The notes under the pieces are model-generated. The model ran no database searches and had not been told where the DNA came from. It was given only the letters and a program-made list of their open reading frames with translations. 64,000 nucleotides of DNA from Macrostomum lignano (lineage: Eukaryota). The stretch lies in the NCBI GenBank assembly GCA_002269645.1, contig NIVC01000305.1, positions 434,001 to 498,000 of the forward strand. Direction: 5' to 3'. Numbering within the stretch: position 1 is the first letter of the stretch; each line of letters opens with the position of its first letter. Of the stretch, positions 701-55,228 are shown one piece after another. The translations under genes were made by a program, and so were the position numbers.

Positions 701-844
701 GCAGTCATGCACTATGACTAAATTCTCTACCCTAGAAAAAAAACAAGCCAAACTTGCTAAGTACTTGGTAAGTCAACAATGCAACCTCGTGGCAAGTACC
801 GCCTAAGTACTTTCTAAGTTTTCCAAGTACACTCAATAAGTATT

Positions 845-4889: not shown

Positions 4890-6221
4890 ATGAATACGCC
4901 CTGGCAACTACGGCCTGCCGCGCTCCTTCTGCTGACGTTTGCGTTTGGCGGAATCCAACAGGCTCAGTCGAGAGGCTTTGAAGCTGAACTGCTCAAGTAT
5001 CTGAAAAACAACATCACCGATTTCAGCCGAACACTTCGACCAAACATCAATCCCGAGAAGGTAGTTGAAGTGTCAATAATGGCGTTTCCTTTCCAAATTG
5101 TGTCAGTGAACAGCGTTAAACAAAGCATGACAATAAACATAATTTTGCAACTCAGCTGGTTCAATGAGCATCTGGTTTGGGATCCTGCGAAATTCGGACG
5201 TCTGTCTGTCATAGAATGGGAAAACCAGCAGATTTGGACTCCTCCGATTGTGATTTTTAATGGCATCGGTCAAAACCAGTTCCCCGTGCTTCGGTTCCCT
5301 TTGCACTTATTATCAACTACAAGAAACCTTTCAATAGTGGCCACCTCCTGGAGAGATGAAGTGGAATTCTCTTGCAAGCTCGACATGCGCCGTTTTCCAT
5401 TTGACCGACACAGCTGCGACCTGGAGCTGTACATAGAGGACCAAGCCCACATGTACAATTCAACAGTTCCTACAGTTAAAAATCTGTGGAACGAATCAAA
5501 AGAATTCAATGAAAAAAGTGCCTACCAAGAGAGCAGTGAGTGGAGAATGTTGAACTTGAGCACACGCGTGCACATGCGACAGTTTCAAACATTCAAAAAC
5601 TCACCGCCGATTCTTCTACGGATCTACACGATGCACATAGAGATCGAGCGGGTGTCCACTTACTATGTGTTAAATGTGGTGACTCCCCTGCTGCTGCTCA
5701 CGCTGCTCCAGGTGCTCGTCTTCTTCGTGCCAGTCGAGTCTGGAGAGAAGCTGGGCTTCGGCATCACCATCATGCTGAGCTACACGGTGTTCCTGCTGCT
5801 GCTGGACGGCCTGCTGCCCAAGTCGCAGTCGATGCCGGCTGTGGCGTCGTTCATCACGGCGGCCATGGTGCTGTCGACGTCGTCTCTGCTGCTGACGTCG
5901 GTGTCGATTCGGTTCCACTTCGCTGCGGAGTCCCAGCCGATGCCGTCGTGTCTCCGGTTCGTGTTCGTGAGCTGCCTGGGCCGCGCGCTGCTGTGCGGTG
6001 AGAGGCGAGGCGGCAGCAGGACGGCACCTGAGGAAGACGCCGACGACGCCGCGGTGAGCAAAGCGGGCCATGAAGACGAGAGGCCCGTAGAGACCTCCGG
6101 AGACCCGAGGCGCTCGGAGTGGCAGGTCGCAGCGGTCGCTGTGGAACGGCTGATGATTTTCTTGGGCTGTCCGACTGCAGGGGCCATTTTGGTTGCATTC
6201 GTCATTGTTCCTCTGCTGTGA
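4890..6221 (+). CDS. Cys-loop ligand-gated ion channel subunit, nAChR-like non-alpha (gene A), single coding exon, 443 aa
   Basis: Signal peptide; RP motif; WDP; Cys-loop CKLDMRRFPFDRHSC; SEW; TM1-TM3 with SGEKLGFGITIMLSYTVF; short intracellular loop; TM4. No vicinal CC in loop C. Confidence 0.95.
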   Translation: MNTPWQLRPAALLLLTFAFGGIQQAQSRGFEAELLKYLKNNITDFSRTLRPNINPEKVVEVSIMAFPFQIVSVNSVKQSMTINIILQLSWFNEHLVWDPAKFGRLSVIEWENQQIWTPPIVIFNGIGQNQFPVLRFPLHLLSTTRNLSIVATSWRDEVEFSCKLDMRRFPFDRHSCDLELYIEDQAHMYNSTVPTVKNLWNESKEFNEKSAYQESSEWRMLNLSTRVHMRQFQTFKNSPPILLRIYTMHIEIERVSTYYVLNVVTPLLLLTLLQVLVFFVPVESGEKLGFGITIMLSYTVFLLLLDGLLPKSQSMPAVASFITAAMVLSTSSLLLTSVSIRFHFAAESQPMPSCLRFVFVSCLGRALLCGERRGGSRTAPEEDADDAAVSKAGHEDERPVETSGDPRRSEWQVAAVAVERLMIFLGCPTAGAILVAFVIVPLL

Positions 6222-7431
6222 TCAGCTGGCACCGATATGAAATTGTTGAACAAATTATTCGCGTCAGTATAATTAAATTTTGGCTTAGGCACAATGCTTT
6301 AGTCTGACTGCCCGCGTTTCCTGCAACCCATTTTTTGGCCTCTCTGGACGGAAAGCCATGGAGCGGTGCGTGCGCGTGAAGTGTCTGGTCACAGCGCGAA
6401 TATCAACTTCTACTGAAATCAATTTCGTCAGTAGTATCTGCAGTGCATGCATCGGTCTTAGTTTGTTTGAGTAGCTTTTTTAATTCGTGAGAAGTTCTAT
6501 CATTTACTCAAAAAATAGCGTCTATGTCCCTAAGCTACTGAACTCAAAATTTAAGCAACCCATGTCGGCTTTTTTTCTCACAAGTGGCGAAAATCAGCAG
6601 TCCCACTTTTCCTGTTGCCGCCATACAAAGTGGCCTATCTAGGCAAGACATGTGGCCTAGAACACGACTGCGCGTTAGCCCTCCATAATTTTATGACTAA
6701 ACTCAGACGCTTTTAGGGAAAAAAAAGCCTCTTTGTTCTTTTTGGGTGAGCAAGCTAAGTCTAAAAAATCGATTGGAATTCTTTTAGTGTCCCTACCTGA
6801 GGACCAAAGCAAACACTGCAGAGACTTCTCTGTCTCTTGGCTCAAATTCTTTGCAAAATGTAATATTTTTCTCAGCTATAGCAGATCTATAATAAAGAAT
6901 TGATGCAATTTAGTCAACAGTCAGTATCATTTGCTTACCAAGTACATTGGTGCATTCATATACATCCATTTAGTTTAGTTAATTGATTTTTAAGCAGTTA
7001 AAACACTTGAAAGAGGTTTATTTTAATCGCAAGTGAAAAGTACTTGGATTTCTTGGATAAGCGAATTTTATAAGGAATATATCGTGTAGTTGCATGTAGG
7101 AAAGTTGTCGGGAGCAATGACTGTTCAGAGAAAATTTCGTTAAATAAAGGGATTTTCATTATCACTTTTTTGAGGTTCGTGTAACGACAGAAAGATTCGA
7201 ACACTAAGACAAGGTTATGGGGGTTAAAACAAGTGACGCGCAAAGAAATCAATAAACACGTAAAACAGATGAAAAGAAAAGTTATTCTGCATAAAAAAGG
7301 ATCTGAATTTCGCGAGATAATCCGACGATTTTCAAAATCAAAAAATTTTCATTGCTGTTACTTAACAGTAGTAAAATATCACATGCGTATCTAAAAAACA
7401 GCAAAACAAAAGTCGGGCAATCGGAAAGCAG

Positions 7432-8735
7432 TTATTCGACGAAGGGTGGAACCAGAAACGCAAACAAAATGGCGACAATCGCCACGCAGCCCACGACGGC
7501 CATCAGCCGCTCCACGGCGGTTGAAGCTGTTTTCCAGTCCGAGCGCCTCTCGCCGTCGTCACCCGCCTTTCTCACCACAGCGTCGTCGGCGTCTTCCTCA
7601 GGCGCCGTCCTGCCGCCGCCTCGCCTCTCACCGCACAGCATCACGCGGCCCAGGCAGCTCACAAACACGAACCGAAGACACGACGGCATCGGCTGAGACT
7701 CCGCAGCGAAGTGGAACCGAATCGCCACCGACGTCAGCAGCAGAGACGACGTCGACAGCACCATGGCCGCCGTGATGAACGACGCCACGGCCGGCATCGA
7801 CTGCGACTTGGGCAGCAGGCCGTCCAGCAGCAGCAGGAACACCGTATAGCTCAGCATGATGGTGATGCCGAAGCCCAGCTTCTCTCCGGACTCGACGGGA
7901 ACGAAGAAGACGAGCACCTGGAGCAGCGTGAGCAGCAGCAGGGGAGTCACCACATTCAACACATAGTAAGTGGACACCCGCTCGATCTCCAGTCGTACCA
8001 CGTAGGTCGGCAGTTTCATTTTCGGTTGTCCCTTGAAAACCGCATATTCTTTGTAGCGCACGAACGTGCTCAAGTTCAGCAGATTCCATTCGCTGTTCCT
8101 AACATAGGCCCCCACTTCATTGAATTCCACTGATGGGCCATACTGAAGGCTGCCCTTTTTTACAGCAGGTTGTCCTTTCCCCGCCCCTGGTCGTTAGCGA
8201 ACAGCTCCAAGTCGCAGGTGTGCCGATCGAACGGGAACCGACGCATGTCGAATTCGCAGGAGAACTCCCATTCACGCCTCCAGATGGCTGATACCACTGA
8301 CTTGTCTGGTGCCACGGATGTGATGAACGGCGGAAACTGTGGACTTAGCAGCTGGTTGTCTCCGATGCCATTGTACACAAATATCACAGGAAAGTAGATC
8401 TTGCCGATCTCCCAATCCATCACGGTGATGTTGCCAAACTCCTTAGGATCCCAGACCAGTCTTTCCTCATACCAAGTTGCAAACATCAGGGCAGTAATTT
8501 TAATACTCTGCTGTACGCTGTCCACCATCACAATCTGACCCATCACGGTGGACAAGTAGACGCTCATTGACTGACTGTCCAAGGCTGGTCGCAGAGTCGG
8601 GCTGTAGTCCGTGATGTTGTTTTCCAGATACTTCAGCAAAGCCGCTTCGAAATCTTGCTTAGGCATCTTGGAGTAGCAGCTGGTCAGCTGGGTTGCGATG
8701 GCAACAAAAAATAATAATTTGCTGAGTCCTAACAT
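7432..8735 (-). pseudogene. Cys-loop nAChR-like subunit (gene B) with one frameshift near 8156-8162 (pseudogene or assembly indel)
   Basis: ATG at 8735 (MLGLSKLLFF...). The ECD with CEFDMRRFPFDRHTC stops at GRGKDNLL* (8160). The continuation KKGSLQYGPSVEFNEVGAYVRNSEW...TM4 is in another frame (ORF 7432-8130). The break sits at an A6 run. Confidence 0.85.
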
Positions 8736-9376
8736 TTCGGCAAAACTATTAGTCAAAGGCTCGCGTGACGAGTGCATTAATTCCACGAGAGTGAATGTCT
8801 TTTATGCTGCATCTCGACAGTCTCAACTGTTTCTACACAGCCAATGGAAGTGCAGTTTAACAAAAGCTTTTCCCACCGAACAGGTTTGGCAAACATAAGG
8901 TTCAGTTGGGTTGAGAGGGTTGGCTGCATATCGAGTTTCTGGATTGCAAAAGCTACAATTTGGAGCGTTCTACCAGTGCGTTTTACCTTAGGCAAATTTT
9001 ACAAATGTAACTACAACTCAATGCCACTCAAACAATCACACATCGTTGCTGGGAGCTTCCAGTAAGCTTGAAGACAAGAAATTTTACACTCCAAGAGCCC
9101 ATTGCTGAGCCTAGCTGCACATGCCTCTACCACAATGAATCTCTCGAGATCTCTCTCCCATCCCGCGCCGGTAGCTTCAGTCCCAATTACTTCTGTTTTG
9201 CTAATTCAACAGCTGGAAAATCCGTTGTCATGGACGCTAGCGCAAGCTATTTATGGAAAGCAAGTGAAATTTATTATTCATGCAGCTGAGTCCACTTCTC
9301 AACAGTGAATTGGAGGGAGGACAATTTTGCATTTCTTCTGAGGCAGTAAAACACAGGTTCTCGCCGTGCGAGTCAC

Positions 9377-10094
9377 ACCCATTAGGGCCTAACAACCATT
9401 AGGGCCTAACACCCATTAGGGCCTAGCACCCATTAGGGCCTAACACCCATTAGGGCCTAGCACCCATTAGGGCCTAACACCCATTAGGGCCTAACACCCA
9501 TTAGGGCCTAACACCCATAGGGCCTAACACCCATTAGGGCCTAACACCCAATAGGGCCTAGCACCCATTAGGGCCTAACACCCATTAGGGCCTAACACCA
9601 ATTAGGGCCTAACACCCATTAGGGTCTAACACCCATTAGGGCCTAACACCCATTAGGGCCTAACACCCATTAGGGCCTAGCACCCATTAGGGCCTAACAC
9701 CCATTAGGGCCTAACACCCATTAGGGCCTAACACCCATTAGGGCCAAACACCCATTAGGGCCTAACACCCATTAGGGCCTAACACCCATTAGGGCCAAAC
9801 ACCCATTAGGGCCTAACACCCATTAGGGCCTAACACCCAATAGGGCCTAGCACCCATTAGGGCCTAACACCCATTAGGGCCAAACACCCATTAGGGCCTA
9901 ACTCCCATTAGGGCCTAACACCCATTAGGGCCAAACACCCATTAGGGCCTAACTCCCATTAGGGCCTAGCACCCATAAGGGCAGCTAACACCTATTAGGG
10001 CCTAACACCCATTAGGGCCTAACACCCATTAGGGCCAAACACCCATTAGGGCCTAACTCCCATTAGGGCCTAACACCCATTAGGGCCTAACACC
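9377..10094. repeat. 17-bp tandem satellite containing TTAGGG, about 42 copies
   Basis: Unit ACACCCATTAGGGCCTA, period 17 (9431, 9448 and onward). Confidence 0.95.
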
Positions 10095-10290
10095 CAGAGT
10101 ACATGTCTGACGATTAGAAAGTCTGTGCCGCTGTACACGAGTCTAACATAAAGGCTAACTAAGCCGCTCTAACAATAGGAAAAACTTGAAAATGTTCATT
10201 TAGTTACGTTTAAATAAAGTAAAAAGTACAATTTAACAGAAGCGTTGACTATCTGTACGACTGCAAATATTATTGCTTGTTAGTAATGTA

Positions 10291-11030
10291 CGAGGGGTGT
10301 CCCAGAAGTAGTGTCACTTTTGCTTGCTTCCATAAGTATTAATGTGTGTTTAAAAAATCATATGCCTTAAAAGTTAGCGGCTTATTTTAGCTTTCATGCC
10401 ACGAAAGTCCGATATTTATAAGTGCTTCCTGCTGTAAGCAGCATGCATTTGTTCGCATACCCTTAGCCATAGAAATACACACCGCATTGTGCTTCTATGC
10501 TCACTCAGAACAAAGCCACAAGTACAGCTGATCAAGCACAGAGGTGCAAGACAGCGGCTGCAAGATTTGTTCCAGTCATGGACCCTAACATTCACTCTAC
10601 AGAAGGGCGGAGACATGCAATTTTTACACTTTAGAGTCTTGGTCTGAAATGCCCTGAAATTCGCGAAAACTGACCCGCATTCACGGTCCCGATCCAATCA
10701 GTTAACGAACAGTTTACAGGTGGATCGAACAGTTCGAGGCTGGCTGTAGATATCAAAGGCCAACCACCTTTGGGTAAGTTGGCAAAACATACTGCCGGTC
10801 AGCCTCGAGCTGCTGTCTTACAACTCTGTGCTTGATCAGCTCTACTTGTGGCTTTCTTCTGAGTGAGCATAGAAGCACTATGCGGTGTGTATTTCTATGG
10901 CTAAGGGTATGCGAACAAATGCATGCTGCTTACAGCAGGAAGCACTTATAAATATCGGACTTTCGTGGCATGAAAGCTAAAATAAGCCGCTAACTTTTAA
11001 GGCATATGATTTTTTAACACAAATTAATAC
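10291..11030. mobile_element. Foldback/MITE-like element with about 220-bp inverted arms and a mariner-like left end
   Basis: Arms at about 10336-10559 and 10809-11030 are reverse complements with few mismatches. Left end TA-CGAGGGGTGTCCCAGAAGTAGTG resembles a similar end at 37402 (TA-CAAGGGCTGTCAAAAAGTAGTG). The matching right tip was not found. Confidence 0.7.
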
Positions 11031-11069
11031 ACCTTTTCACGTTCAATTTTGATCAATGTCCAGTTCTAA

Positions 11070-11205
11070 AAAAACTAGCGGAAATTCAATTCAGACTGAA
11101 GATGATATTGTGTATGGCTAAACCTTACTTCGGTTAGAATGTTTTGAGCTGGGGTTAGACTGGGCCCCAGTCTAAATTGTCTGAATTGAATTTCCGCTAG
11201 TTTTT
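11070..11205. mobile_element. Small MITE with perfect 27-bp TIRs
   Basis: AAAAACTAGCGGAAATTCAATTCAGAC (11070-11096) and GTCTGAATTGAATTTCCGCTAGTTTTT (11179-11205). Not seen at the paralogous position downstream of gene D. Confidence 0.7.
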
Positions 11206-11369
11206 CCGCTAGAAGCCACAACAGCACAAGATTTCCTACCGAATGAAGGTTGCGAGGGGTACAAGAGGCGAGTTAAAGACCTAGGAACAGAGTAGAGAAC
11301 GTTACCAATCTTAGTTTTTATGTCAAGTTCGATCAGCAGCAGCAACTTATTGAAAAACCTGTTGCAAAT

Positions 11370-12695
11370 TCAGTCAACGAAAGGCCGAACCAGGAACACG
11401 CAGAAGATGGCGACGGTAGCCACGCAACCCACGACGGCCATCAGCCGCTCCACAGCGACCGCTGCGACCTGCCACTCCGAGCGCCTCGGGTCTCCGGAGG
11501 TCTCTACAGGCTTCTCGCCGTCATCCCCACTCGCCTTGCTCACGTTGTCGGCGTCTCCCTCTGGCGCCGTCCTGCTGCCGCCTCGCCGCTCACCGCACAG
11601 CATTGCGCGGCCCAGGCAGCTCACGAACACGACCCGGAGACACGACGGCATCGGCTGAGACTCCGCAGCGAAGTGGAACCGAATCGCCACCGACGTCAGC
11701 AGCAGAGACGACGTCGACAGCACCATGGCCGCCGTGATGAACGACGCCACGGCCGGCATCGACTGCGACTTGGGCAGCAGGCCGTCCAGCAGCAGCAGGA
11801 ACACCGTGTAGCTCAGCATGATGGTGATGCCGAAGCCCAGCTTCTCTCCGGACTCGACGGGAACGAAGAAGACGAGCACCTGGAGCAGCGTAAGCAGCAG
11901 CAGGGGAGTCACCACGTTGAGCATGTAGTAAGCGGACACTCGCTCGATCTCCAGTCGTACCACGTAGGTCGGCAGCGGCATTTTCGGTAGTTCTTTGAAA
12001 ACTTTATAAAAGCGGAAGTGCACGAAGGTGCTCACATTTAGTATTCGCCATTCACTGTTTTCTCTATAGGCAGACAACTCATTGTATTCCAGACCCTGTG
12101 CGAGCATGTTGCCCTTGTGCGGCATCACCAGCTCGTTTCCGCGACCCATGTCGTACATGTAGAGCTCCAAGTCACAGGTGTGCTGATCGAACGGGAACTG
12201 CCTCATGTCGAACTCGCAGGAAAACTCCCAGCTCCGTTTCCAACTAGCGCTTACTACGGTGGAATTCGGCGACACGGAAGTCAGGAATGTGGGAATCTGG
12301 GGCTTCATCAGCTGATTGTCGCCGATACCATTGTACACAAAAATGATGGGGAACCAGATCTGGCTGGTGCCCCAGTCCACGACCGACACTCCTCCGAACT
12401 CGGACGGGTCCCACACCAGGCGCTGCTCCTCCCAGGTGGCCAGGAGCAATGCAGAAATCTTGAAGCTCTGGCTGGCGCTGTCAACAGACACGATTTGATT
12501 TACCATGACGGCCACAGAGATGTTCACAACCTCTGTGTGGTTAAGTCTTGGTCTGACCATCGGGTGATAGTCGGTGATGTTGTTCTTCAAGTACTTCATG
12601 AGCTCGATTTGTGGATCAGATGCGTTGCACAGTGGCAGAGCAGCAACGAGAGCCACTGCTGGCAAAAACAGCAGGTCCACTCTTGGATGAAGCAT
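11370..12695 (-). CDS. Cys-loop nAChR-like subunit (gene C), single coding exon, about 441 aa
   Basis: ATG at 12695 (MLHPRVDLLFLPAVALVAALPLCNA signal peptide); CEFDMRQFPFDQHTC Cys-loop; GEK M2; four TM segments; intact ORF. Confidence 0.95.
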   Translation of the reverse strand: MLHPRVDLLFLPAVALVAALPLCNASDPQIELMKYLKNNITDYHPMVRPRLNHTEVVNISVAVMVNQIVSVDSASQSFKISALLLATWEEQRLVWDPSEFGGVSVVDWGTSQIWFPIIFVYNGIGDNQLMKPQIPTFLTSVSPNSTVVSASWKRSWEFSCEFDMRQFPFDQHTCDLELYMYDMGRGNELVMPHKGNMLAQGLEYNELSAYRENSEWRILNVSTFVHFRFYKVFKELPKMPLPTYVVRLEIERVSAYYMLNVVTPLLLLTLLQVLVFFVPVESGEKLGFGITIMLSYTVFLLLLDGLLPKSQSMPAVASFITAAMVLSTSSLLLTSVAIRFHFAAESQPMPSCLRVVFVSCLGRAMLCGERRGGSRTAPEGDADNVSKASGDDGEKPVETSGDPRRSEWQVAAVAVERLMAVVGCVATVAIFCVFLVRPFVD

Positions 12696-13201
12696 TGCCA
12701 AACTCAAAATAAGAAAGTGTTTGCCGAAACTCAGCCCCTCTCTGGATAAATATCAGCTTTTGTAGGATCTTTTTCCTTAGTTCAACACAATTTATTTTAA
12801 CGTCGATTTTTATCGATCGGCCTTAAATTTAACGAACCAACAGCAAAAATTTCTCAAATTGATTTCTCAACCACCACTATGTAGTTGCCAGAATTCTTCC
12901 CGCTAATTGGCTAGGCACCTAGATACCAATTAAAAAGAGCATGGGATGTGGCACAAGAAATGATTGACACTTGTAGTAAAATCCACTCTCGACAAAAATT
13001 TAGCATTCAGCCAAAAGAGCGAAGCGTGGAAATTGATTCTCAAGATCTGTTTAGCAACTATGTTAACAATTACGTTTTGGATTTGGCAAGGATTCTGTTT
13101 ACCTCAGAGGATAATATTCAGCATTACTTTTAGTAGAAGAGACGATATTTTAATCTCAAAAATGCTTTACGCGAGCAATCTACGTTTTATAATCGTCTCA
13201 T

Positions 13202-15401
13202 TGATGTAACCGTCCTTGTCGCCTGTCCGCTCCGTAGAGAGACGAACGCATGACTAGAGGGGGCAATGATCGTAGGCTGCCTATGACCGGGCAATGACCT
13301 GACGGACCTCCAGCACCAGACTGTCCCGCCCACATGACTAGTAGCTTTGGTAGCGCTTCGTGACCAGAGGGCCAAGGACCCACATGGACCCCACCTGTAG
13401 CCAAGGTGCAATAGTTGGTCACTCGGTCATGGTATGACCGAGTGGCTGCCACCACTCTATGTGACCTGGCGCACCTGGATCTTGCTACCAGACCTCTCGA
13501 GGTTAGAGCCCCGCCTGGGATGGTTACCAGGGGATTTAGGCTAACAGGGGAGACGCATGCAGCCGAGTACAGGGACTCTGCTTGGGGCATGATCGGGAAC
13601 TCTGGGCTCAATCCTGGAGGATTTCTCAGCAGGGGATCCTTTGTGGCTGTGAGCGAGGCTGACTTGCGACTTTGATTACTAAGAGTAGTATGAGGCGAAC
13701 ATGTACTGTCTCTAGTTTAGATTGCTCAGGGCGAAGGGACGCGTTAGCATGGGGTTGCAACCTTCCTACTGCCATTCTGTGCCAAGACTCGCCAATACCC
13801 TCTACTGCACGCACTCACGGACCCGCGGCACGCACTCACACAGGCGGGCGTTGCGCGGGGAGAGGCCATTAGCTTACCCAAACTTCCTTATGCTTTGCCA
13901 CCCCGGGAGAAAGGCTTAGCAAGCCATGAGTGAAATGATGGTGAAAGAGTGAATAATGATGAGGTTAGTTAATAGTTAATAATTAGGCCCTAAGGAAAAT
14001 AATCAGGCAATTAGGCGGCTTCACTATTGAGTAAAAATACAGCAAAAGGTACGGTATCACAACTGGCTCAGCTCTCTAACCAGACAATGGAAAAATAGGC
14101 AAACCCCGGATAAGCAAGGGCAATTAGAGCACAAATTAGTAAAAGGAACTTACCGGCAGCTGCACAGAGAGAGAGAGAGAGGCGGAGTGACCGAGGGCGG
14201 CTGTAGGCTGCAGTCAGGCAGACAGTGAAGCGGCGAGGCGCTGATGTAGATCAGGCAAAGCTGATGATGCTGGGCGGTATCAGACCGCTGGCCAATAGGC
14301 GAGCTCACTTGGGGAGCTGAAGATAACTTGGCGGTAACAGACCACGGACCGGCAGGGATTCGTCTTATAGACGAATGGGTCAGAACTCAGTCTGACGGCA
14401 AGTCTAAAGAAAGACTAGGAGCCCGAAGGTTGAGGATTCTCATGCCGAAAACCGCTTCCTTTTATAGCCTTCCCAGCCGCCGCTCCAAGGTCGTTTCCAT
14501 GACTCCCTCTCTCTGATTGGCTGCCGGCCGAATGACGTCAGAATGAGTCATGATGAGAAACATGAGACCGGCATAGCAACATGAGAAATAGGGAAATTGC
14601 GCAATCCGGAGGTGGGGTTGGGGGGATAATTGGCGCAGCGGGTGGTCGCGAAAGTGTTGCGCAAGCAAACATTGAGAACAATAGGGCCGGGGTCGAGAAC
14701 AAAGGAATTCGAAATCGGGGACAATTGGGGAGAATTGAGAACAATAGAAAAGCAAACATTGGAGAAAAGGTGATAATTAGGTGCAAAAACGAGAACAAAA
14801 GAAAGAGAAAATCGGAGAAAATGTGATAATTGGTGGGGGTAAAGAGAACAAAAGAATCAAAAACGAGAACAATAGAAGCGGAGGTGGGGTGGGTGCCGCA
14901 TGAGAAATTTGGGGAGGAGAAGAATAGCATGAGAAAAGGTTGCGCAAGAGAGGGGGATGAGTCATCGATGAGTCATCGAGGGGAAGAAGGGGTCACACGA
15001 CTTGCGTCACCGTTTGGGAGCTTGGGAAGGGATGGGAGGTCGGTGAGCACACAAAATACTGTAAGTAGACGCAGAGAAAGAGGGGACAGCGCAAGAAAAG
15101 AGTGCAGAGAGAGACAAAAAGAGGGGGGATAGGGAAAGTACAAGAAGAATAGGGTGGAGCGCAGAGGAGATAAGGTAGAGGGGGAGCTACAGAGAGGGAT
15201 AGGGAGCTCCGGAAAGGCAGGTGTGACGGCAGGGGAGACGGAGCCAAGGCAGCAGGGGGGTGCAGCAGAGCGGGAGTCTCTAGGCCTGGTCGGAGACCTG
15301 GCCGAGTCTCGACAGCTCTGTGCAGGGGAGGTGCACGGGATAGGAGGCACTTTCGAAAAAGTTCCCATGCCCTATCCCGCGACCAGAGCGTGGTTACATC
15401 A
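13202..15401 (-). mobile_element. 2.2-kb solo-LTR-like insertion (TG...CA, 4-bp TSD)
   Basis: Perfect terminal inverted TGATGTAACC...GGTTACATCA; TSD TCAT at 13198-13201 and 15402-15405. The paralogous empty site upstream of gene D (about 26625-26640, CTGTCTTATCTGACACTTA) matches the rejoined flanks. No recognisable coding domain. Confidence 0.8.
14458..14550 (-). promoter_or_regulatory. LTR U3-type core promoter (AP-1, CRE, CCAAT, TATA) on the minus strand
   Basis: Minus-strand GGCTATAAAAGG (14458-14469), CCAATC (14515-14520), palindromic TGACGTCA (14533-14540) and TGAGTCA (14544-14550, also 14958 and 14969). Motifs are seen directly; activity is inferred. Confidence 0.5.
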
Positions 15402-16019: not shown

Positions 16020-16519
16020 AAGCACATGTGGCTCACATGTGGCTCAGTAGAACAGCAGAAACCGACCTAGATTTTGTTGACTCAGTCCAGTGGCTCGCAT
16101 TGCCTCCTGCACTGTTCGGACGAACCTTTCTGCGAGCCCGTTGCTTTTCGGATGGTACGGCGGTGTTGTTACATGCTGGCAACCAACACTCTTGAGCCAA
16201 TTGGTTGTGTCGCGACTTTCCTAGTCATTTCTTTAGTTCACTTTTACTTGTCCGTGTTTACTCCCTTTTCTCTCTCTCTGTCTAGCTCAATCTTGTTATT
16301 CTCATCTCTCTCTCCCTCGCCGCTTCTGATTGGCTCTCCATTCTAGCCTCCCTCTTTAGTCGCGCACACCACCCCTCCTTTTATTAAATTGGAGTCAACC
16401 CCCTCTAAGATAGTCGGATAAATATACTGGTTTGGGCCCTGCGCCCACTTACTTCCTCTCTGCTCTTCTGTCTCTGCAATTTAATTATAGTTTATACTCT
16501 TATTTTCTCGATAGGTTGT

Positions 16520-19500
16520 AACCAACTGCGTCTATTGTCAGTCACCAGAGTCCTAGGAATTCCGAGCTGCGAAAAAGTTCGTCGTAGCCGAGACACCCTG
16601 TGGCTGATTCCCTGTCGTTAGTCAGATGGACTTCTGGGTAGCTTGAGAAAGACTCTACCAACACCAATAAGTACAGCCAATTGATTGGTCCCGCAGTCGG
16701 GACGATTCCATGACTCTGTAGTCTGTGGCCAGGAACTGAGGTGATTCCGGTTGCTCGATTTGACCATCTTGTACATTGTACACCTGCTGATGTAGTCCAT
16801 GACTTTGTAGCGTATTCACTAATATTATAAAAGTATTGCAGCTAGCGTATTATAATTACTGTATTCTAGAAACTTCCGCGTAAACACGCACTTTCCATAT
16901 TTGGCGTTTTGAATTCCCGCGCACCCCCTTTCTAGAAACTGCTTCTCGAACTTTCCGGATTCCGGAATGTTCCATCAACACGAATATAAATATACAGCAC
17001 CCTAGCACGCAATTACTCAAGCCCATTCTCTCTATTCTTTTCCACACGGAAACAATCAAAGAAAAATTAAAGCAAACGAACCACCGCTTTCCACGCCTCA
17101 ATTATTTTCGCTATTCTACAACTGGTCCGGTGAGGCGTCCAAAATTCATCTGAGTCCCCAGCAAGGGGCTAGGCCGTCGAAGTGCGTGTAAATATCCGTG
17201 TAAATACTGCCTGAATGTAGCATAACGCCATCATCGACATTGCCATCAACGCCATGCCTCATCGTCGTCTGCACGCGCCCGTCGTCCACGCCACTACTGG
17301 ATATAGCTACCGGATGCATCATACGTGTACGACACGATATTAACCTGATCGACGTAATTCTACAAACGTGGTATCGAAGTTGACACGGAACTCATCGACG
17401 ACAGACAGACAAATGCCTACACGGGTATTACCAGGCCGTTCGATAGAGTCTTCCGTGAACCCCACCAAATTCTACGCCAAAATAAGCCGAAATATCACCA
17501 GTCAACCAAGCTGCTATTGACCAAGGAACGCGCGGCTGAAACCTTCGGCGATCGTCTTTATATGACACCTTCCACGAGGTGATCGACATCCCGAGGGGCA
17601 ACCCAGCCTGTCAATCGGTTCGCCTTGTGCGCTCCATCAGCCATGCCCAGCAATATTCAGCGACCGCCCGCCGTCGTCCTCATATTAGTCTCGGGAGTCT
17701 GTCTGCAATTCGAAAGGTCGTCCTGCCTGACGATCCGTCGTCCTGGAGTGTGGCTGAGCGTGCCACAAGCATCCCAAGTTCTCCTACCAGAAGCGCGTTG
17801 CGTGTACACCTGCTACGAGATGCCTACCGGAGCAGAGCGACAGCCCGCCTCGACTCACGGTGCACCGATCTTGTTCCGGGTGTCGTCTGTCTGCATCCTG
17901 GCACATTCCGTCTATGTACATTGCTATTCGGCCAACCGGGGGCATCGCAGTAAGGTCTGATTTGCGAAATGACTAATTAATCAAGCAGCTTGACTTCACC
18001 AGTAATAACGTTTCACTTATTATTGAATATGTACATCATCGCCCCTATGCTGTAACAGTTTGAAATCTGCATGTACAAACGTACATGTCCACGCCCCCCC
18101 CCAATTCATCATCTAATGTATATATTTTTTTCCGGTACTTCTCCAGGTGACTCCGTCTCCGGCGGGGGAACTGTTGTAGCGTATTCACTAATATTATAAA
18201 AGTATTGCAGCTAGCGTATTATAATTACTGTATTCTAGAAACTTCCGCGTAAACACGCACTTTCCATATTTGGCGTTTTGAATTCCCGCGCACCCCCTTT
18301 CTAGAAACTGCTTCTCGAACTTTCCGGATTCCGGAATGTTCCATCAACACGAATATAAATATACAGCACCCTAGCACGCAATTACTCAAGCCCATTCTCT
18401 CTATTCTTTTCCACACGGAAACAATCAAAGAAAAATTAAAGCAAACGAACCACCGCGTTCCACGCCTCAATTATTTTCGCTATTCTACAACTTCCTTGTC
18501 CAAAGCTGGCCACCAGTATTGTGAGCGTATTAAAGACTTAGTCCTTTCCATGCTCAGGTGCGTCGAATGAGCTTTCTCCATGATCGTTTGTCTCAACGCA
18601 CGCGGTGGAACTACTCTCAATCCTCTAATAACCATTCCGTGTCCCATAGTTAGTTCGCTGGACACCATCTTGTAAGGCCGTAGGTCCTGGTGGTTGAAAT
18701 TTCCAGTTCGGATCGTTTCTTGGAGTCGTTGTAACTCCGGACATTGCTCGGACTGAATCCGCAACTGCTCAATAGTTGAAGTCGGGTGAGCCAGCTCAAC
18801 ACTGCCAATGCTGAGTGTTTGCCCCTGTCAAAAAATGCAAGAAGTCGAGACAATGCATCGGATTTCATCAGGCCAGACCTCTGATACCTCTGCGGATCAG
18901 GCCGTCCTCCAGTACGAAGCCTAGAAATCGCATCTTTCGCTGAGAGATTTGGCAATTCCTGTCGTTAATTTTGAGATTGTGCTGCTGAAGCCTCGCTCTG
19001 ACCAGCGCTTCCCTTTGTTTCAACTGCTCCTTAGTCTGGTCGCCAATTAGTATGTCATCAATAATAGGCTACGGCTCTTTCAATTCCCTGCACGAGCTGT
19101 GTGTTATCTTTGAAATATGTGGGCGCTTTAGTGATACCAAAAATCAGCCGATTATATTGAAAATTTCCAAATGGAGTCGACATAACAGTCAATGGTTTCG
19201 AGTCGTCCTCCAACTCGATCTGATTATAAGCTGGCTCTAGATCCAGGATAGTATACCAGTGACACCCTGAAACTGCACTGAAGGCTTCTTCGGCCGTTGG
19301 CATAGGATGGCTGTCCCTTACCATCTGGGGGTTTAATGTCTTTTTATAATCGACACAGAGTCTGATGTGTCCATCCGGCTTTGGCCGGAAAATATGAAAT
19401 GGTAGTTCGTGAAGCTTGTCTTGAAACTGGACTGTTCCTTTGAACTGACCAAGCGTCTGGAACTCGTATGTGTCCACGTAACCTGTCAGTTTCAGTTCAC

Positions 19501-20640
19501 TGGTCTGTAGCCGTGGCCTGCCGATTAGTCCAGACTGCATCCGACATCACGGACCCCCGTGTCCAGTTGACACTGAATCGGGATTTTCTTGTCTTCGTGC
19601 ACAAACTGTAGGGTGACGCAGATGGCATCCTGAGTCGGGCCTATAATTGCTCCAATTGTGAACTGGTCTCCATTCATCGCTAGGGACTTGCTGGACACAA
19701 ACTGCACTGAGTCGACACGGCCTGCAGCGTCTATCTTCGTCTGGCACGCCTTTTGAAAGTGGTTCAGCTTGCCGCACTTGCGACAAGCCTTCCCAGTTGC
19801 CGGTCACTGCATTTTTCCATGCGGTGGCCCACATCGAGGACAGGTGGTACTAGTGCTACGTTTGAACTTGCCTCGACTTTGTCCTTTCGACGATTGTCCT
19901 TTGGACTTGAGCACGCCGATCTTCATGACGGCCGTACTCTCTCCTTTCGGTGCGCTCTTCATGATCTCCGTGGCTATTAAGGTGGAATGAGCCTTAGTCT
20001 CGGCAACCGCATCCTTGAAGGTCAAGATATGATGGTCCTTGACCAAAAGCTTGCCTATGATCTGTTGATCCATCAGAACGAAGATTAGTTAGTCCCGCAG
20101 GCGCTCATCCTTGTTATCAAATTTGCATTTCTCCGCCGCCCGCAGAAGCCGTTCAGCGAACGCCCGCACTGACTCTCCAGGCGTGCGCGTGCACTGTTGG
20201 AACGGGTACCGTTTAGCCAATACAAAGGTTGCCGGTACCAACAGTTCCTTTTAGGCAGCCTCCAACACCGCAGCTGACAATTGACTCGGCTTTGCTGGAG
20301 CCACACGATCGGCTACTCGGTCATATAGGGCCGGAGACAGTTTCATGAGCAGCATCTGCGTCTCGGCATCCCAGCGGTAAAATTTTCCGCAATTTCAAAG
20401 CGGTCCAACCATCGGGCGAAATTATTTCCGACGTCCAGCCGCTCGATCTCCATGGAGCCTCCTCCGGTGCGCCTTGCTGCACCAGCAACTTCATAGACTG
20501 GAGTCTTGACAACAGAGACTGCTGTCTTGGTCGACAGGCTAGCCGGTGGACCTGCTCCTGTTTTTGTAGGGGAGCCAAGTGTTTTCTCGCCTTGCCTACT
20601 TATGCCTGTAGCTGATCATGCTTGCGACGCCACTGTTACA
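16520..20640 (-). mobile_element. Degenerate Ty3/Gypsy retrotransposon (gag-pol remnant), split by a nested LTR element
   Basis: PBS-like GTGGCGTCGC near 20625-20634; gag (KCKFDNKDERLRD) and CCHC knuckles CPRC/CRKCGKLNHFQKAC; protease LDTG; RT KPDGHIRLCVDY...PFGNFQYNRL with a frameshifted YIDD; integrase zinc finger AHSTHL...WWP continuing across the insert (DKEV-MDYISRC); core LRRTFSQLGIPRTLVTDN. Many stops and deletions; matching LTRs not identified. Confidence 0.85.
16806..18489 (+). mobile_element. Young non-autonomous LTR element (TRIM-like): two 315-bp LTRs and about 1.05 kb of non-coding interior
   Basis: LTRs 16806-17120 and 18175-18489 (TGTAG...CTACA) with one visible substitution; TSD ACTT (16802-16805, 18490-18493); TGG PBS-like site after LTR1; purine tract GGCGGGGGAA before LTR2. 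Confidence 0.92.
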
Positions 20641-20769
20641 TGTATATTGCGGTCTTTACCAGGGGATTATTAGCTCCCAAGTACTGTTTATTCTCTTTTT
20701 ATTTAACAGCCAGCTTTTCGTTTCAACATAAGCCAAGGAATTTTAAATCTAGAAACTGGAATGACAACT

Positions 20770-23529: not shown

Positions 23530-26500
23530 TTTTTATTTAACAAAAGCTTTTACCAGTGAACAGGTTCAAGTAAACAAGAAGGTTCAGTGCAGAGAGGGTT
23601 GGCTGCATCGATTTTCTGGATTGCAAAGAATACAATTTGGAATGCTTGAAGCTACGCGTCAGTTGACTAAGTTAAGTTAAGCTAAGTTAGACAATGGGAG
23701 CAGTGCACGCGTTTTACTAAGGCTATAATTTTAACTAGAATTTAATTCTTCTTAAACAGTACACACATCTTTTCTGGGAAACTGTCATCACGTTAGCTTG
23801 AAAAACAAAAAATTACTCTTTAAGAGCCCATTGTTGAGCCAACTTTTACATGCCTCTACCATACTACATCGCTATCTCCCTCTTTTCATCCCATCACGCA
23901 CCGGGAGCTTAAGCCCAATTAATTACTTCTTGTTTGCCACATTTCAATAGCAGGAAAATCCGTTGTCATAGACGCTAGCACTAGCTCTTCATTGGACAGC
24001 AAGTGATATCTATAATTCATAGGGCCGAGCTCACTTCTCAACAGTGAATTGGAGGGAGAATGATTTCGCATTTCTTCTGAGGCAGCGCGATGCAGATGAG
24101 AACTAAAAATTGCAACCCGTTTTTGCAAATTTACGGCAAACACACAAGCCATAAACACAGTCATATGAGTGATGTCGTGCGACTTACATCATGACAGCCG
24201 ACACCCAAGTCACAGAGAGTGTACATGCCTGCCGATTAGAGAAAGTCAAATTGGCGCTGTACACCTTGTGGCGAGCGTGTGTGTGACTGCGTACAGTATT
24301 GGTGCTCTTCTTAGTTAGCACTGGTTGTGACATGATGTCACTGAAGGCCTTCGGTCCTGGATGCCCATAATCCACTTGCAACTATTTATAGGTCATTTAA
24401 GCAGTTTTAAAAAAGCGTTTCACATGCCGCAAATTCCAAAGATAAAGACCAGTCTCACTGCGATTGAAAACTTTTATTGAGAAGTCACCTCTTACCAATC
24501 GAAGGACAGAAAGGACGTAGTACATTTAGAGTCTAACTTAAAGGCTAAGACCTTTGCTCTAACTAAAGAAAAAGCAAAACAATTTTTTTTTGTATCGCAC
24601 GGCTTGTACAAGCATTTTTTTCACTTCTAAGTATGAACTTATAATTAATTTGATGACAGAATAAACAAGCCGCAACGGCACAAGATTTCCTACCAAAAAA
24701 GGTTACAAAAGGCAAAACAGCGTGTTAAAACGTAGGAACAGAATAGAGAACGTTGAGAATTTTTGTTTCAATGTTTACGAGCTCGTACTACTACGATCAA
24801 TGAGTCAGCAGCTGCAACTATTCAAAATTCATTGCACGAAGGGCCGAACGAGGAACACGCAGAAGATGGCGACGGTGGCCACGCAGCCTATGATGGCCAT
24901 CAGCCGCTCCACAGCGACCGCTGCAACCTGCCAGTCCGAGCGCCTTGGCTGTCCAGAGGTCTCTCCAAGGCTCTCATCTTCGTCGCCCACCTTGCTCACA
25001 ACAGAGTCGTCGGCGTCTCTCTCCGGCGCCGTCCTGCCGCCGCCTCGCCTCTCACCGCACAGCATCGCGCGGCCCAGGCAGCTCACGAACACGACCCGGA
25101 GACACGACGGCATCGGCTGAGACTCCGCAGCGAAGTGGAACCGAATCGACACCGACGTCAGCAGCAGAGACGACGTCGACAGCACCATGGCCGCCGTGAT
25201 GAACGACGCCACGGCCGGCATCGACTGCGACTTGGGCAGCAGGCCGTCCAGCAGCAGCAGGAACACCGTGTAGCTCAGCATGATGGTGATGCCGAAGCCC
25301 AGCTTCTCTCCGGACTCGACGGGCACGAAGAAGACGAGCACCTGGAGCAGCGTAAGCAGCAGCAGGGGAGTCACCACGTTGAGCATGTAGTAGGTGGACT
25401 CGCGCTCGATCTCCAGTCGTACCACGTAGGTCGGCAGCGGAATTTTCGGTAGTCGTTTAAAAATTTTATAATAGCGGAAGTGCACAAAGGTGCTCACATT
25501 TAGTAATCGCCATTCGCTATTTTCGACATAAGTAAAAAGCTCATTGTATTGCAGACCCTGTGCGAGCATGTCGCCTGTATGTGGCATGACCAGCTTATTG
25601 CCGCGGCCCATGTCGTACATGTAGAGCTCCATATCGCAGGTGTGCCGATCGAACGGGAACTGCCTCATGTCGAACTCGCAGGAGAACTCAAAGTTTCGTT
25701 TCCAGTTAGTGCTTACTATGGTGGAATTCGGTGACACGGAAGTCAGGAATACGGGAAGCTGGGGCTTCATCAGCTGATTGTCGCCGATGCCGTTGTACAG
25801 GAATATGATGGGGAACCAGATCAGACTGCTGTCCCAGTCCACGACCGACACTCCTCCGAACTTGGAGGGGTCCCACACCAGGCGCTGCTCCTCCCAGGTG
25901 GCATATAACAATCCGGAAATCTTGAAGCTCTGGCTGGCGCTGTCAACATACACAATTTGATTAACTATGGCGGCTACAGAGACGTTCACAACTTCTGTGT
26001 GGTTGAGTCTCGGCCAGACCATCGGGTGATAGTCGGTGATGTTGTTCTTCAAATACTTCATGAGCTCGATTTGTGGATCAGATGCGTTGCACAGTGGCAG
26101 AGCTGCAACGAGAGCCACTGCTGGCAGAAGCAGCAGGTCCACTCTTGGATGAAGCATTGCCAACTCAAAATAAGAAAGTGTTTGCCGAAACTCAGCCTTT
26201 CTCTGGATGAACGTCAGTCGATACGCTTTTTCAGTTTGCCTCCAATTTAACGAGCCAACAGGAAAAAATAATTTTTCAACTACCCACTTTGCAGTTGCCA
26301 GACTTCTTTCCGCTAATTGGCTAGGCTCCTACTAGATACCAAATAAAAAAAGGGATGTGGCACAAAAATGATTGACACTTTGACACAAAATTTCACTTTT
26401 GACAAAAATTTTAGCAATTCGTCAAACTTCTCAAGATCTGCTTAGCAACTCTGGGAACAATTATATTTTCGAATTCGGCAAGAATTCTGGCATATTATGT

Positions 26501-55204: not shown

Positions 55205-55228
55205 TCTGTCTGTCTATTTGTTTGTCCA

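What the first reader, a model, noticed from the sequence alone, without database searches (positions are those of the whole stretch)
4890..26157. Array of intronless nAChR-like channels without the acetylcholine pocket: candidate chemosensory receptor family
Seen: four single-coding-exon Cys-loop genes within 21 kb. In each, the loop B Trp position (C+7) is E, N, Y or Y. The loop D Trp is absent (NIIL, TALM, SALL, SGLL) and loop C has no vicinal CC, being long and basic/hydrophobic instead. A long segment lies between loop B and SEW. The pore keeps -1' Glu (GEK), 9' Leu and 13' Val. Known: the ACh cage needs Y93/W149/Y190/C192-C193/Y198/W55, GEK marks cation selectivity, and cephalopod chemotactile receptors are intronless, tandem, ACh-insensitive nAChR derivatives. 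Inference: this may be an independent, lineage-specific expansion of cation channels for non-ACh, possibly environmental, ligands.
Basis: partly seen in the sequence, partly recalled or inferred. Interest (0 to 1): 0.85.

Follow-up and report, generated by a model that had tools for sequence, protein, structure and literature searches.

The report
Flatworm orphan nicotinic-like channel gene cluster
Four intronless nicotinic-receptor-like channel genes sit together in a Macrostomum flatworm genome; they have lost most acetylcholine-binding residues, keep a cation-type pore that gene conversion holds nearly identical between copies, and have an unknown ligand.

Summary
One copy (G2, 7432-8786) is broken by a 1-nt frameshift and a TAA stop, so only three are intact single ORFs.

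The window is Macrostomum lignano or a near-identical sibling or homeolog. The genes belong to a clade found only in Macrostomum (100% bootstrap). A second intronless three-gene array lies on another M. lignano contig. By sequence and fold the closest relatives are nAChR alpha1 and alpha7. Octopus chemotactile receptor CRT1 scores far lower, so the loss of the ACh pocket is independent of cephalopods.

New here: a tract of about 320-360 nt encoding most of M1 through M3 is 96-99% identical between all four copies. The ligand-binding domains are saturated at synonymous sites. GC3 in the tract is 0.88-0.93. The sister M. lignano cluster has the same pore protein but diverged synonymous sites. 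This points to domain-restricted gene conversion.

Purifying selection (ECD dN/dS about 0.25, M2 invariant) argues for working channels. A non-ACh ligand is plausible. A chemosensory role has no evidence. This is a new flatworm member of a known lophotrochozoan pattern.

The parts
4890..6221 (+). G1: intact intronless nAChR-like subunit gene, 443 aa, with signal peptide, ECD, M1-M4 and a short ICD. Loop B C+7 is Glu; the loop D motif is NIIL.
   Evidence: ORF; Pfam LBD E 1.4e-27 and TM E 4.1e-18; alignments.
7432..8786 (-). G2: nAChR-like subunit gene, probable ATG at 8735. It is interrupted by a 1-nt frameshift and an in-frame TAA at 8160-8162 beside an A6 run in the loop F region. Either a young pseudogene or a homopolymer assembly error.
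   Evidence: Two ORFs; sequence; frame repair. ECD dN/dS against G3 is 0.25, the same as the intact copies.
11370..12695 (-). G3: intact intronless subunit gene, 441 aa from the ATG at 12695. Loop B C+7 is Tyr; the loop D motif is SALL.
   Evidence: AlphaFold2 model: pLDDT 78, pTM 0.67, canonical beta-sandwich plus four helices.
24829..26157 (-). G4: intact intronless subunit gene, 442 aa, a recent duplicate of G3 (88% aa identity). The duplicated segment 11213-13097 matches 24667-26489 at 83.6% nt.
5671..5986 (+). Core gene-conversion tract in G1, covering most of M1, M2 and M3. Elevated identity extends to about 5640-6155.
   Evidence: 8-11 differences in 316 nt against the other copies; blastn; third-position identity 0.87-1.0.
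7643..7958 (-). Core gene-conversion tract in G2.
11605..11920 (-). Core gene-conversion tract in G3.
25067..25382 (-). Core gene-conversion tract in G4.
   Evidence: G3 and G4 differ at 2 of 316 nt here, against about 12% in the ECD.

Best explanation
The locus is one of at least two tandem arrays of a Macrostomum-specific clade of intronless subunit genes derived from nicotinic acetylcholine receptors.

Shown:
- Each gene encodes a complete pentameric ligand-gated channel subunit.
- The pore sequence is of the cation-selective nAChR type.
- The extracellular domain is under purifying selection, but it lacks the loop B Trp, the loop D Trp, the loop C Cys-Cys pair and Tyr198.
- Loops B, C and F are the least conserved parts of the protein.
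- The segment from most of M1 through M3 is kept nearly identical between the four copies by GC-biased gene conversion, while the ligand-binding domains have diverged to synonymous saturation.

Inferred:
- The subunits form cation channels gated by something other than acetylcholine.
- Different copies recognise different ligands or co-assemble into heteromers.
- The shared pore module keeps gating, conductance and assembly interfaces uniform while the sensing module diversifies.

The ligand and the expressing cells are unknown.
For: Domain content and fold:
- Pfam domains.
- AlphaFold2 model with 10 strands, helices M1-M4 and a short post-M3 helix.
- Foldseek top 50 are all nAChR subunits, TM-score 0.67-0.84.
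- Torpedo alpha1 is the best PDB sequence hit, E 1.6e-44.

Pore: S-G-E-K-L-G-F-G-I-T-I-M-L(9')-S-Y-T-V(13') aligns without gaps to alpha1 M2.

Lost ACh determinants.

Selection:
- ECD dN/dS is 0.23-0.27.
- M2 is 100% identical within each cluster and 96% between them.
- In the second cluster the TM1-3 synonymous p-distance (pS) is 0.53-0.65 and the non-synonymous p-distance (pN) 0.12-0.17, which shows protein-level constraint.

Binding-loop variability: loops B, C and F are 21-26% identical between clusters, against 32-59% for the other ECD segments.

Gene conversion:
- ECD pS is 0.63-0.82, against 0.04-0.115 in TM1-3.
- Third-position identity is 0.87-1.0 across alignment codons about 250-370.
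- Longest identical runs are 63-174 nt, permutation p<=0.0005 for every pair.
- GC3 is 0.88-0.93 in the tract, against 0.52-0.71 in the ECD and 0.54-0.79 in the same region of cluster B.
- G1 and G3 share an identical stretch of about 57 nt in the ICD/pre-M4 region where G4, the sister of G3, differs. This indicates more than one conversion event.

Lineage restriction.

Second array in M. lignano: three intronless copies plus a fragment on L001.
Against: - There are no functional, expression or ligand data.
- None of the four genes is in the 5.8-billion-protein collection, and none is found by exact look-up. They are therefore unannotated, which may mean low or no expression.
- G2 is disrupted as assembled.
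- The Tyr93 and Tyr190 equivalents are retained, and an aromatic residue lies near the Trp149 position in most copies, so a small cationic ligand (choline, betaine, an amine, even ACh at low affinity) is not excluded.
- Subunits lacking binding residues can serve as structural partners of canonical alpha subunits.
- No significant enrichment of G3/G4 substitutions in the binding loops was seen (about 64% of changes fall in about 56% of the ECD). Diversifying selection is therefore not demonstrated.
Confidence: 0.6

Rival explanations
1. These are chemosensory or environment-sensing receptors, a flatworm analogue of cephalopod chemotactile receptors. They would be expressed in epidermal or ciliated sensory cells and gated by food, conspecific or hydrophobic cues.
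For: - They share with CRs, as described in PMC11526382: intronless genes, tandem clusters, nAChR ancestry and loss of ACh binding.
- Loops B, C and F are the most variable parts of the protein.
- A uniform pore with a variable ECD fits a receptor repertoire.
Against: - There are no expression data of any kind.
- The family is small: at least 8 loci were counted.
- ECD dN/dS of about 0.25 gives no sign of diversifying selection.
- The family is not related to CRs beyond the common nAChR ancestry.
- nAChR-clade receptors for betaine and choline (ACR-23, DEG-3/DES-2), which appear among the PDB hits, show that divergent members can be ordinary neuronal or muscle receptors.
Confidence: 0.2
2. These are non-ligand-binding accessory or structural subunits that co-assemble with canonical Macrostomum alpha subunits in ACh-gated heteromers, like vertebrate beta1, beta3 or alpha5.
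For: - There is no vicinal Cys pair, so they are non-alpha by definition.
- The pore and gating elements (Cys-loop FPFD, M2, the M2-M3 Pro) are conserved.
- The ICD is short.
Against: - The complementary-face Trp55 is also missing.
- The clade sits on a very long stem away from all canonical subunits (Kimura distance at least 1.7).
- Several tandem paralogs with diverging binding loops but an identical pore are not expected for a purely structural subunit.
Confidence: 0.15
3. These are decaying retrocopies with no function; the resemblance to receptor repertoires is incidental.
For: - G2 carries a frameshift and a stop.
- The genes are not annotated in public M. lignano protein sets.
- A TM3-M4 fragment lies beside the second cluster.
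Against: - Three of the four ORFs are intact over about 440 codons although ECD synonymous sites are saturated.
- dN/dS is 0.23-0.27.
- M2 is invariant across both clusters while synonymous sites have diverged in cluster B.
- One cluster B member is an annotated protein (PAA92206.1).
Confidence: 0.05

Closest known systems
Lophotrochozoan expanded, intron-poor, tandemly arrayed nAChR-like genes (Jiao et al. 2019, PMC6896357) and orphan members such as Alvinella Alpo4 (PMC10338036)
   Same: - The host is a lophotrochozoan.
- Coding regions are intronless and lie in tandem arrays of 3-4 genes.
- Sequences are highly divergent.
- The loop C Cys-Cys pair is lost and the ligand is unknown.
- The nearest outsiders in my tree are short nAChR-like proteins of Lingula, a chiton, Ridgeia, bivalves and amphioxus.
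   Different: - This is a flatworm clade. The terms flatworm, platyhelminth, Schmidtea, Macrostomum and Schistosoma do not occur in the 2019 paper, which states that intronless nAChR genes were found only in molluscs.
- No orthology to a molluscan or annelid family could be resolved (distance at least 1.7).
- The family is small.
- Alpo4 keeps the aromatic ligand-binding residues, whereas these genes lack Trp149 and Trp55.
- Gene conversion restricted to the pore module is not mentioned in that paper (0 occurrences of the term).
Cephalopod chemotactile receptors (CRT1/CRB1; PDB 8eis)
   Same: Both are nAChR-derived, intronless and tandemly clustered, have lost ACh recognition, and form cation channels as homo- or heteropentamers (CR features from PMC11526382).
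   Different: - They are not the same clade. With the ECD as query, CRT1 scores 41 bits (E 1e-9), against 69 bits for alpha1, 62 for alpha7, 61 for ACR-23 and 50 for 8bx5 (deposited only as 'Acetylcholine receptor'; identified as Alpo4 from my own knowledge).
- CRT1 is absent from the top 50 structural matches.
- CRs have documented sensory expression, hydrophobic agonists and diversifying selection in the pocket. None of these is known here.
Muscle alpha1 and neuronal alpha7 nAChR subunits
   Same: - They are the best sequence and structure matches.
- Shared features: the 13-residue Cys-loop with FPFD, the S-G-E-K intermediate ring, 9' Leu, 13' Val, and Tyr93 and Tyr190 equivalents.
   Different: - Only 22-26% identity.
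- No Trp149, no Trp55, no Cys192-Cys193, no Tyr198, and Asp89 of the WxPD motif is lost.
- Loop F is 8-10 residues longer and loop C about 3 residues longer.
- The M3-M4 loop is short.
- 2' and 4' are Gly.
Regional gene conversion in clustered protocadherin variable exons (fugu Pcdh2, PMC1852091; Noonan et al. 2004)
   Same: - Tandem receptor paralogs have a divergent recognition part and a homogenised part that is more than 95-99% identical at the nucleotide level.
- GC3 is raised in the homogenised part.
- The homogenisation is specific to a lineage or cluster and is absent from a sister cluster (compared).
   Different: - The protein family is unrelated.
- Here the homogenised part is an ion-channel pore module in the middle of a single-exon gene.
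- Two of the copies lie on opposite strands, so part of the exchange is between inverted copies.

Membership tests
Cys-loop / pentameric ligand-gated ion channel superfamily | Neur_chan_LBD plus Neur_chan_memb domains, and a 13-residue disulphide loop | tested here: met
   Pfam hits lie above the gathering scores for all copies. The motif C-x13-C with FPFD is read directly.
Cys-loop / pentameric ligand-gated ion channel superfamily | A beta-sandwich ECD followed by four transmembrane helices | tested here: met
   AlphaFold2 model of G3: strands between residues 57 and 252, helices 254-276, 284-306, 314-341 and 407-440, pLDDT 78. Foldseek probability 1.00 to nAChR chains.
Nicotinic acetylcholine receptor subfamily (ACh-gated) | Closest to nAChR subunits rather than to 5-HT3, GABA or Gly receptors | tested here: met
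   alpha1 E 1.6e-44 and alpha7 E 5e-42, against 5-HT3A E 4e-25.
Nicotinic acetylcholine receptor subfamily (ACh-gated) | Aromatic box and loop C disulphide: Trp149, Trp55, Tyr198, Cys192-Cys193 | tested here: not met
   The corresponding residues are E/N/Y/Y (or Y/F under the gapped alignment), I/L, K/L (G3; the other copies have other non-Tyr residues), and V-F or T-F. The cluster B copies have I/S/A at C+7.
Nicotinic acetylcholine receptor subfamily (ACh-gated) | Tyr93 (loop A) and Tyr190 (loop C) | tested here: met
   Y or F at both positions in all seven copies.
Nicotinic acetylcholine receptor subfamily (ACh-gated) | Cation-selectivity signature (Glu at -1', no Pro-Ala-Arg motif), 9' Leu gate | tested here: met
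   The S-G-E-K...L9'...V13' sequence aligns without gaps to Torpedo M2.
Nicotinic acetylcholine receptor subfamily (ACh-gated) | Gating by acetylcholine | not testable with these tools
   Requires electrophysiology.
Cephalopod chemotactile receptors | Intronless, tandemly clustered, ACh-binding residues lost | tested here: met
   CR features are taken from PMC11526382.
Cephalopod chemotactile receptors | Membership of the CR clade | tested here: not met
   CRT1 (8eis) ranks 60th at 41 bits with the ECD query, below alpha1, alpha7, beta subunits, ACR-23, DEG-3 and 8bx5. The family is monophyletic with Macrostomum sequences only.
Cephalopod chemotactile receptors | Expression in sensory cells and activation by hydrophobic or environmental ligands | not testable with these tools
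   No expression or ligand data are accessible. No paper mentions the M. lignano gene id.
Lophotrochozoan intron-poor tandem nAChR expansions (Jiao 2019) | Lophotrochozoan genome; intronless nAChR-like genes in tandem arrays | tested here: met
   Host identified by 98% aa identity to the M. lignano protein P0198 and by 94-98% nt collinearity with NIVC01003985.1. Arrays shown.
Lophotrochozoan intron-poor tandem nAChR expansions (Jiao 2019) | Orthology to one of the molluscan or annelid expanded families | tested here: inconclusive
   The NJ sister is a single Lingula protein across a very long branch. The nearest distances are at least 1.7, so placement is unresolved.
Regional (domain-restricted) gene conversion in tandem receptor clusters | Near identity at synonymous sites confined to one segment, raised GC3 there, and absence in a sister cluster | tested here: met
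   pS is 0.04-0.115 in the tract against 0.63-0.82 in the ECD. GC3 is 0.88-0.93 against 0.52-0.71. Cluster B has TM1-3 pS 0.53-0.65. Permutation p<=0.0005.

The most novel reading that the evidence does not exclude
A free-living flatworm has independently turned the nicotinic receptor scaffold into a small modular family of environmental or contact chemoreceptors. A common pore and assembly cassette would be actively homogenised by gene conversion, so that any mix of diverging ligand-binding domains can co-assemble into working heteropentamers. This would be a second, convergent origin of CR-like sensory channels outside cephalopods, with a cassette-style mode of evolution not described for pentameric channels.
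Probability: 0.15. Interest if true: 0.75.

Novelty: new member of a known kind. Interest (0 to 1): 0.45.

Why it matters
Lineage-specific, intronless, ACh-pocket-less nAChR derivatives are already documented in molluscs, annelids and cephalopods. Finding them in a basal free-living flatworm widens the pattern and gives a tractable test system, because Macrostomum lignano is an established laboratory model (own knowledge: RNAi by soaking, transgenesis, transparent body). The domain-restricted gene conversion separates the sensing module from the pore module. That offers a way to ask whether a uniform transmembrane domain is maintained to allow free heteromeric mixing of subunits. For annotation, at least six family genes (G1-G4, ML1, ML3) are missing from the protein set searched here or from the gene calls on record for L001.

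Tried and rejected
- **Dinoflagellate origin.** I considered it because of the tandem intronless genes. No spliced-leader relic was found, and the host was later identified as Macrostomum.
- **A very short intron in G2.** The candidate GT...AG is 14 nt. Removing it does not restore the frame, so I rejected it (reasoned).
- **Exact-sequence look-ups** of G1, G3, G4, P0001 and P0002 found nothing. The homeologous copy of cluster A on NIVC01003985.1 could not be fetched, because no gene is called near it and flanks are limited to 10 kb.
- **A profile run of the search for homologous proteins** returned only the two Macrostomum proteins; I did not establish why.
- **Codon bias plus purifying selection as the cause of TM identity.** Rejected: cluster B encodes the same M2 peptide with diverged codons.
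- **An early reading that the window was a different species from M. lignano.** This came from the 50% identity of the receptor genes. It was corrected by the 98%-identical neighbouring gene and by collinearity. G1-4 and ML1-3 are paralogous clusters.
- **Enrichment of G3/G4 substitutions in the binding loops.** Not convincing.
- **Literature searches** for Macrostomum nAChR-like genes, for the gene id, and for pLGIC gene conversion found nothing relevant. The van Giesen 2020 paper was not held.

Full report
**1. What is in the sequence**

ORF listing and Pfam scans show four Cys-loop receptor genes:
- G1: 4890-6221 (+).
- G2: 7432-8786 (-).
- G3: 11370-12695 (-).
- G4: 24829-26157 (-).

tblastn with three of the proteins finds exactly these four copies and nothing else in the 64 kb window.

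G1, G3 and G4 are uninterrupted ORFs of 441-443 codons. They run from a hydrophobic signal peptide to the end of M4 and align collinearly with homologues, so their coding regions have no introns. G2 is broken. A TAA at 8160-8162, beside an A6 run, ends the ligand-binding-domain ORF, and the rest of the protein continues in another frame. A 14-nt GT...AG interval there does not restore the frame. G2 is therefore either a recent pseudogene or a homopolymer assembly error. Its ECD dN/dS (0.25) is the same as that of the intact copies.

**2. The residue claims**

I checked them against Torpedo alpha1 (HMMER alignment) and against six named nAChR subunits (MAFFT):
- The residue seven positions after the second Cys-loop cysteine is E, N, Y, Y in G1-G4.
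- The loop D Trp55 position is I or L (motifs NIIL, TALM, SALL, SGLL).
- Cys192-Cys193 are replaced by V-F or T-F.
- Tyr198 is replaced by K or L.
- Loop F carries 8-10 extra residues, and loop C about 3.
- The pore aligns without gaps: S-G-E(-1')-K(0')-L-G-F-G-I-T-I-M-L(9')-S-Y-T-V(13').

There are two refinements.

First, MAFFT opens a 2-residue gap before loop B, so that the motif Y/F-x-x-D lines up with W149-x-Y-D152. This would place an aromatic residue (Y, F, Y, Y) at the Trp149 position. The AlphaFold2 model has strand beta7 running through C+7 (residues 171-181), which fits the ungapped reading, but I could not inspect coordinates. In both readings the Trp is absent.

Second, the Tyr93 and Tyr190 equivalents are retained as Y/F in every copy. 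The aromatic box is degraded, not erased.

**3. Whose genome this is**

The receptor proteins have only two strong database relatives, at 50% and 47% identity. One of them is Macrostomum lignano PAA92206.1. That first suggested a different species.

The neighbouring acyl-CoA ligase ORF (46621-48333, -) changed this. It is 98% identical to the M. lignano protein BOX15_Mlig021975g3. Window 39.2-59.4 kb is collinear with M. lignano contig NIVC01003985.1 at 94-98% nucleotide identity. The window is therefore M. lignano itself (a homeologous or allelic copy of a genome known to be partly duplicated; that last point is my own knowledge) or a very close sibling species.

The four receptor genes are absent from the protein collection, and exact look-ups fail. 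They are therefore unannotated.

**4. The family**

An exhaustive profile search of 1.84 billion representative proteins gave 12,098 hits. Only Macrostomum sequences (P0002, P0027, P0036) scored well above the general nAChR background. The next-best scores belong to annotation fusions of tandem nAChR-like genes from bivalves, Owenia, Glandiceps and Strigamia, and their totals are inflated by multiple copies.

The M. lignano locus around PAA92206.1 (L001) holds a same-strand array that I call cluster B. It comprises three intronless homologues, ML1 (7863-9188), ML2 (10001-11305) and ML3 (12783-14105), plus a TM3-M4 fragment at 16333-16674. Only ML2 is a called gene there.

In a neighbour-joining tree of 133 sequences:
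- The eight family members (G1-4, ML1-3, P0002) are monophyletic in 100 of 100 bootstraps, on a long stem.
- The nearest outsiders lie at a Kimura distance of at least 1.7. They include Lingula 'alpha-3', Branchiostoma 'alpha-10-like', and chiton, Ridgeia and bivalve proteins.
- With the ECD alone, the window copies still group together (70% bootstrap).

The family is thus a small clade restricted to Macrostomum, with at least 8 loci. It is not a massive expansion.

**5. Relation to known receptors**

By sequence the best solved relatives are muscle alpha1 and alpha7 (E 1e-44 to 1e-41), well ahead of 5-HT3A. By fold, the top 50 PDB matches are all nAChR subunits (TM-score 0.67-0.84).

With the ECD alone as query, the scores are:

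| PDB target | bits |
|---|---|
| alpha1 | 69 |
| alpha7 | 62 |
| ACR-23 | 61 |
| DEG-3 | 55 |
| 8bx5 (deposited as 'Acetylcholine receptor'; I take it to be Alpo4 from my own knowledge) | 50 |
| octopus CRT1 (8eis) | 41 |

The loss of the ACh pocket is therefore independent of the cephalopod chemotactile receptors. Those are described as intronless, tandem, ACh-insensitive nAChR derivatives (PMC11526382).

The general pattern is documented for molluscs and some other lophotrochozoans: intron-poor nAChR-like genes in tandem arrays, highly diverse in sequence (PMC6896357). Orphan annelid receptors such as Alpo4 are a further example (PMC10338036). None of the flatworm terms I searched for (flatworm, platyhelminth, Schmidtea, Macrostomum, Schistosoma) occurs in the 2019 study, which states that intronless nAChR genes were found only in molluscs. 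I found no paper on such genes in Macrostomum.

**6. New observation: the pore module is homogenised by gene conversion**

The two parts of the genes differ sharply:

| Region | Nucleotide identity | Synonymous p-distance (pS) |
|---|---|---|
| ECD, between G1, G2 and G3/G4 | 53-65% | 0.63-0.82 (saturated) |
| TM1-3 region, alignment codons 255-374 | 95-98% | 0.04-0.115 |
| Core tract, most of M1 to just past M3 (316 nt) | 96.5-99.4% (2-11 differences per pair) | not computed separately |
| M4 | 60-89% | 0.23-0.63 |

Across the homogenised segment (alignment codons about 250-370), third-position identity is 0.87-1.0.

A Sawyer-type permutation test gives longest identical runs of 63-174 nt, with p<=0.0005 for every pair. 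GC3 is 0.88-0.93 in the tract, against 0.52-0.71 in the ECD.

The control is cluster B. It encodes an identical M2 peptide, but its TM1-3 pS is 0.53-0.65 and its GC3 is 0.54-0.79. Codon bias and protein constraint therefore cannot explain the identity in cluster A.

In the ICD/pre-M4 region, G1 and G3 share an identical stretch of about 57 nt where G4, the sister of G3, differs at several sites. This indicates at least one further, separate conversion event.

G1 lies on the opposite strand to G2-G4, so exchange occurs between inverted as well as direct copies.

The same signature is the accepted evidence for regional gene conversion in teleost protocadherin clusters: a divergent recognition region, a homogenised region, raised GC3, and presence in one cluster but not in its sister (PMC1852091). 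A full-text search for pentameric channels together with gene conversion and tandem returned two unrelated papers.

**7. Function**

Evidence for working proteins:
- Three intact ORFs persist although ECD synonymous sites are saturated.
- ECD dN/dS is 0.23-0.27.
- M2 is invariant across both clusters.
- In cluster B the TM1-3 non-synonymous p-distance (pN) is 0.12-0.17 against pS 0.53-0.65.

The pore sequence predicts cation selectivity. This rests on established knowledge: Glu at -1' and no Pro-Ala-Arg motif. Loops B, C and F are the least conserved segments (21-26% identity between clusters, against 32-59% for the other ECD segments). This fits divergent ligand recognition. However, substitutions between the young pair G3/G4 are not significantly concentrated in the loops, so diversifying selection is not shown.

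The most likely reading is a set of orphan cation channels gated by something other than ACh, possibly co-assembling through their identical transmembrane domains.

The chemosensory proposal remains an analogy without data. Three rivals are not excluded:
- Accessory subunits of canonical nAChRs.
- Receptors for small endogenous cations such as choline or betaine. There is precedent in ACR-23 and DEG-3/DES-2, which are among the PDB hits.
- Less likely, decaying retrocopies.

**8. Verdict**

- Lineage-specific: yes.
- Independent of cephalopod CRs: yes.
- Cation pore: yes, by sequence.
- Non-ACh ligand: plausible.
- Chemosensory: untested.

This is a new flatworm member of a known lophotrochozoan phenomenon. 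It has one unusual and well-supported evolutionary feature, gene conversion confined to the channel module.

Noticed in passing
window 46618-48351 (-): An intronless 577-codon ORF (571 aa were searched) for an AMP-binding acyl-CoA ligase, FadD3/ACSF2-like. It is 98% identical to M. lignano BOX15_Mlig021975g3. All other hits are only about 30% identical and are mostly bacterial or metagenomic, with tick ACSF2 at 29-31%. I did not examine whether this reflects horizontal acquisition or simply a divergent ACSF2.
   Followed up: partly
window 39170-59383 vs L002 (NIVC01003985.1): The window is collinear with an M. lignano contig at 94-98% nt identity, with indels. This is consistent with a homeologous or haplotype copy or a sibling species. 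By extrapolation, that 66-kb contig should carry an unannotated copy of the four-gene cluster.
   Followed up: partly
L001 7863-9188, 12783-14105, 16333-16674: There is a second tandem array of the family in M. lignano. Two full-length intronless copies (ML1, ML3) and a TM3-M4 fragment are not called as genes on the record; only ML2 (PAA92206.1) is.
   Followed up: yes
window 56505-58190 (+): A single-ORF 561-aa protein with a secretin-family 7TM domain (Pfam 7tm_2, E 1.4e-8) after a Cys-rich N-terminal region.
   Followed up: no
window 59542-61752 (-): A 736-aa ORF with an LRAT domain (E 4.8e-8). It contains twelve copies of a 54-bp (18-aa) tandem repeat, HEVVASPIKPLLEQLSRL, at 60025-60674.
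   Followed up: no
window 838-1324; 3456-4052; 9375-10096; 38121-38630; 48745-50005; 53933-54361; 55205-55910: The window is rich in minisatellites:
- 42 bp x 11.6.
- 82 bp x 7.3.
- 17 bp x 42, between G2 and G3.
- 23 bp x 23.
- 20 bp x 62, which produces long spurious ORFs on both strands.
- A related 20-bp array.
- (TCTG) x 177.

The 42-bp unit also occurs in L001 at 11906-11963, at about 84% identity.
   Followed up: no
window 16805-17123 and 18174-18492; 19058-19540 (-): A 319-bp direct repeat, 99.7% identical, with copies 1.4 kb apart, and a nearby reverse-transcriptase fragment (RVT_1, E 1e-8). Both lie in the 12-kb spacer between G3 and G4, which suggests retroelement insertion into the array.
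   Followed up: no
window 10336-10559 vs 10808-11030: A 224-bp inverted repeat, 96.4% identical, about 340 bp downstream of the G3 stop codon. It may be a foldback or MITE-like element.
   Followed up: no
window 33324-34280 (+): A 318-aa ORF matching the C-terminal half of an AMP-binding enzyme (E 2e-13). It looks like one exon of a multi-exon long-chain acyl-CoA synthetase gene, which shows that introns do occur in this region.
   Followed up: no
window 8856-9346 vs 23536-24085: About 500 bp upstream of G2 resembles, at 70% identity and in the same orientation, a segment about 750-1300 bp downstream of G4. This is either a repeat family or a remnant of the duplication unit.
   Followed up: no
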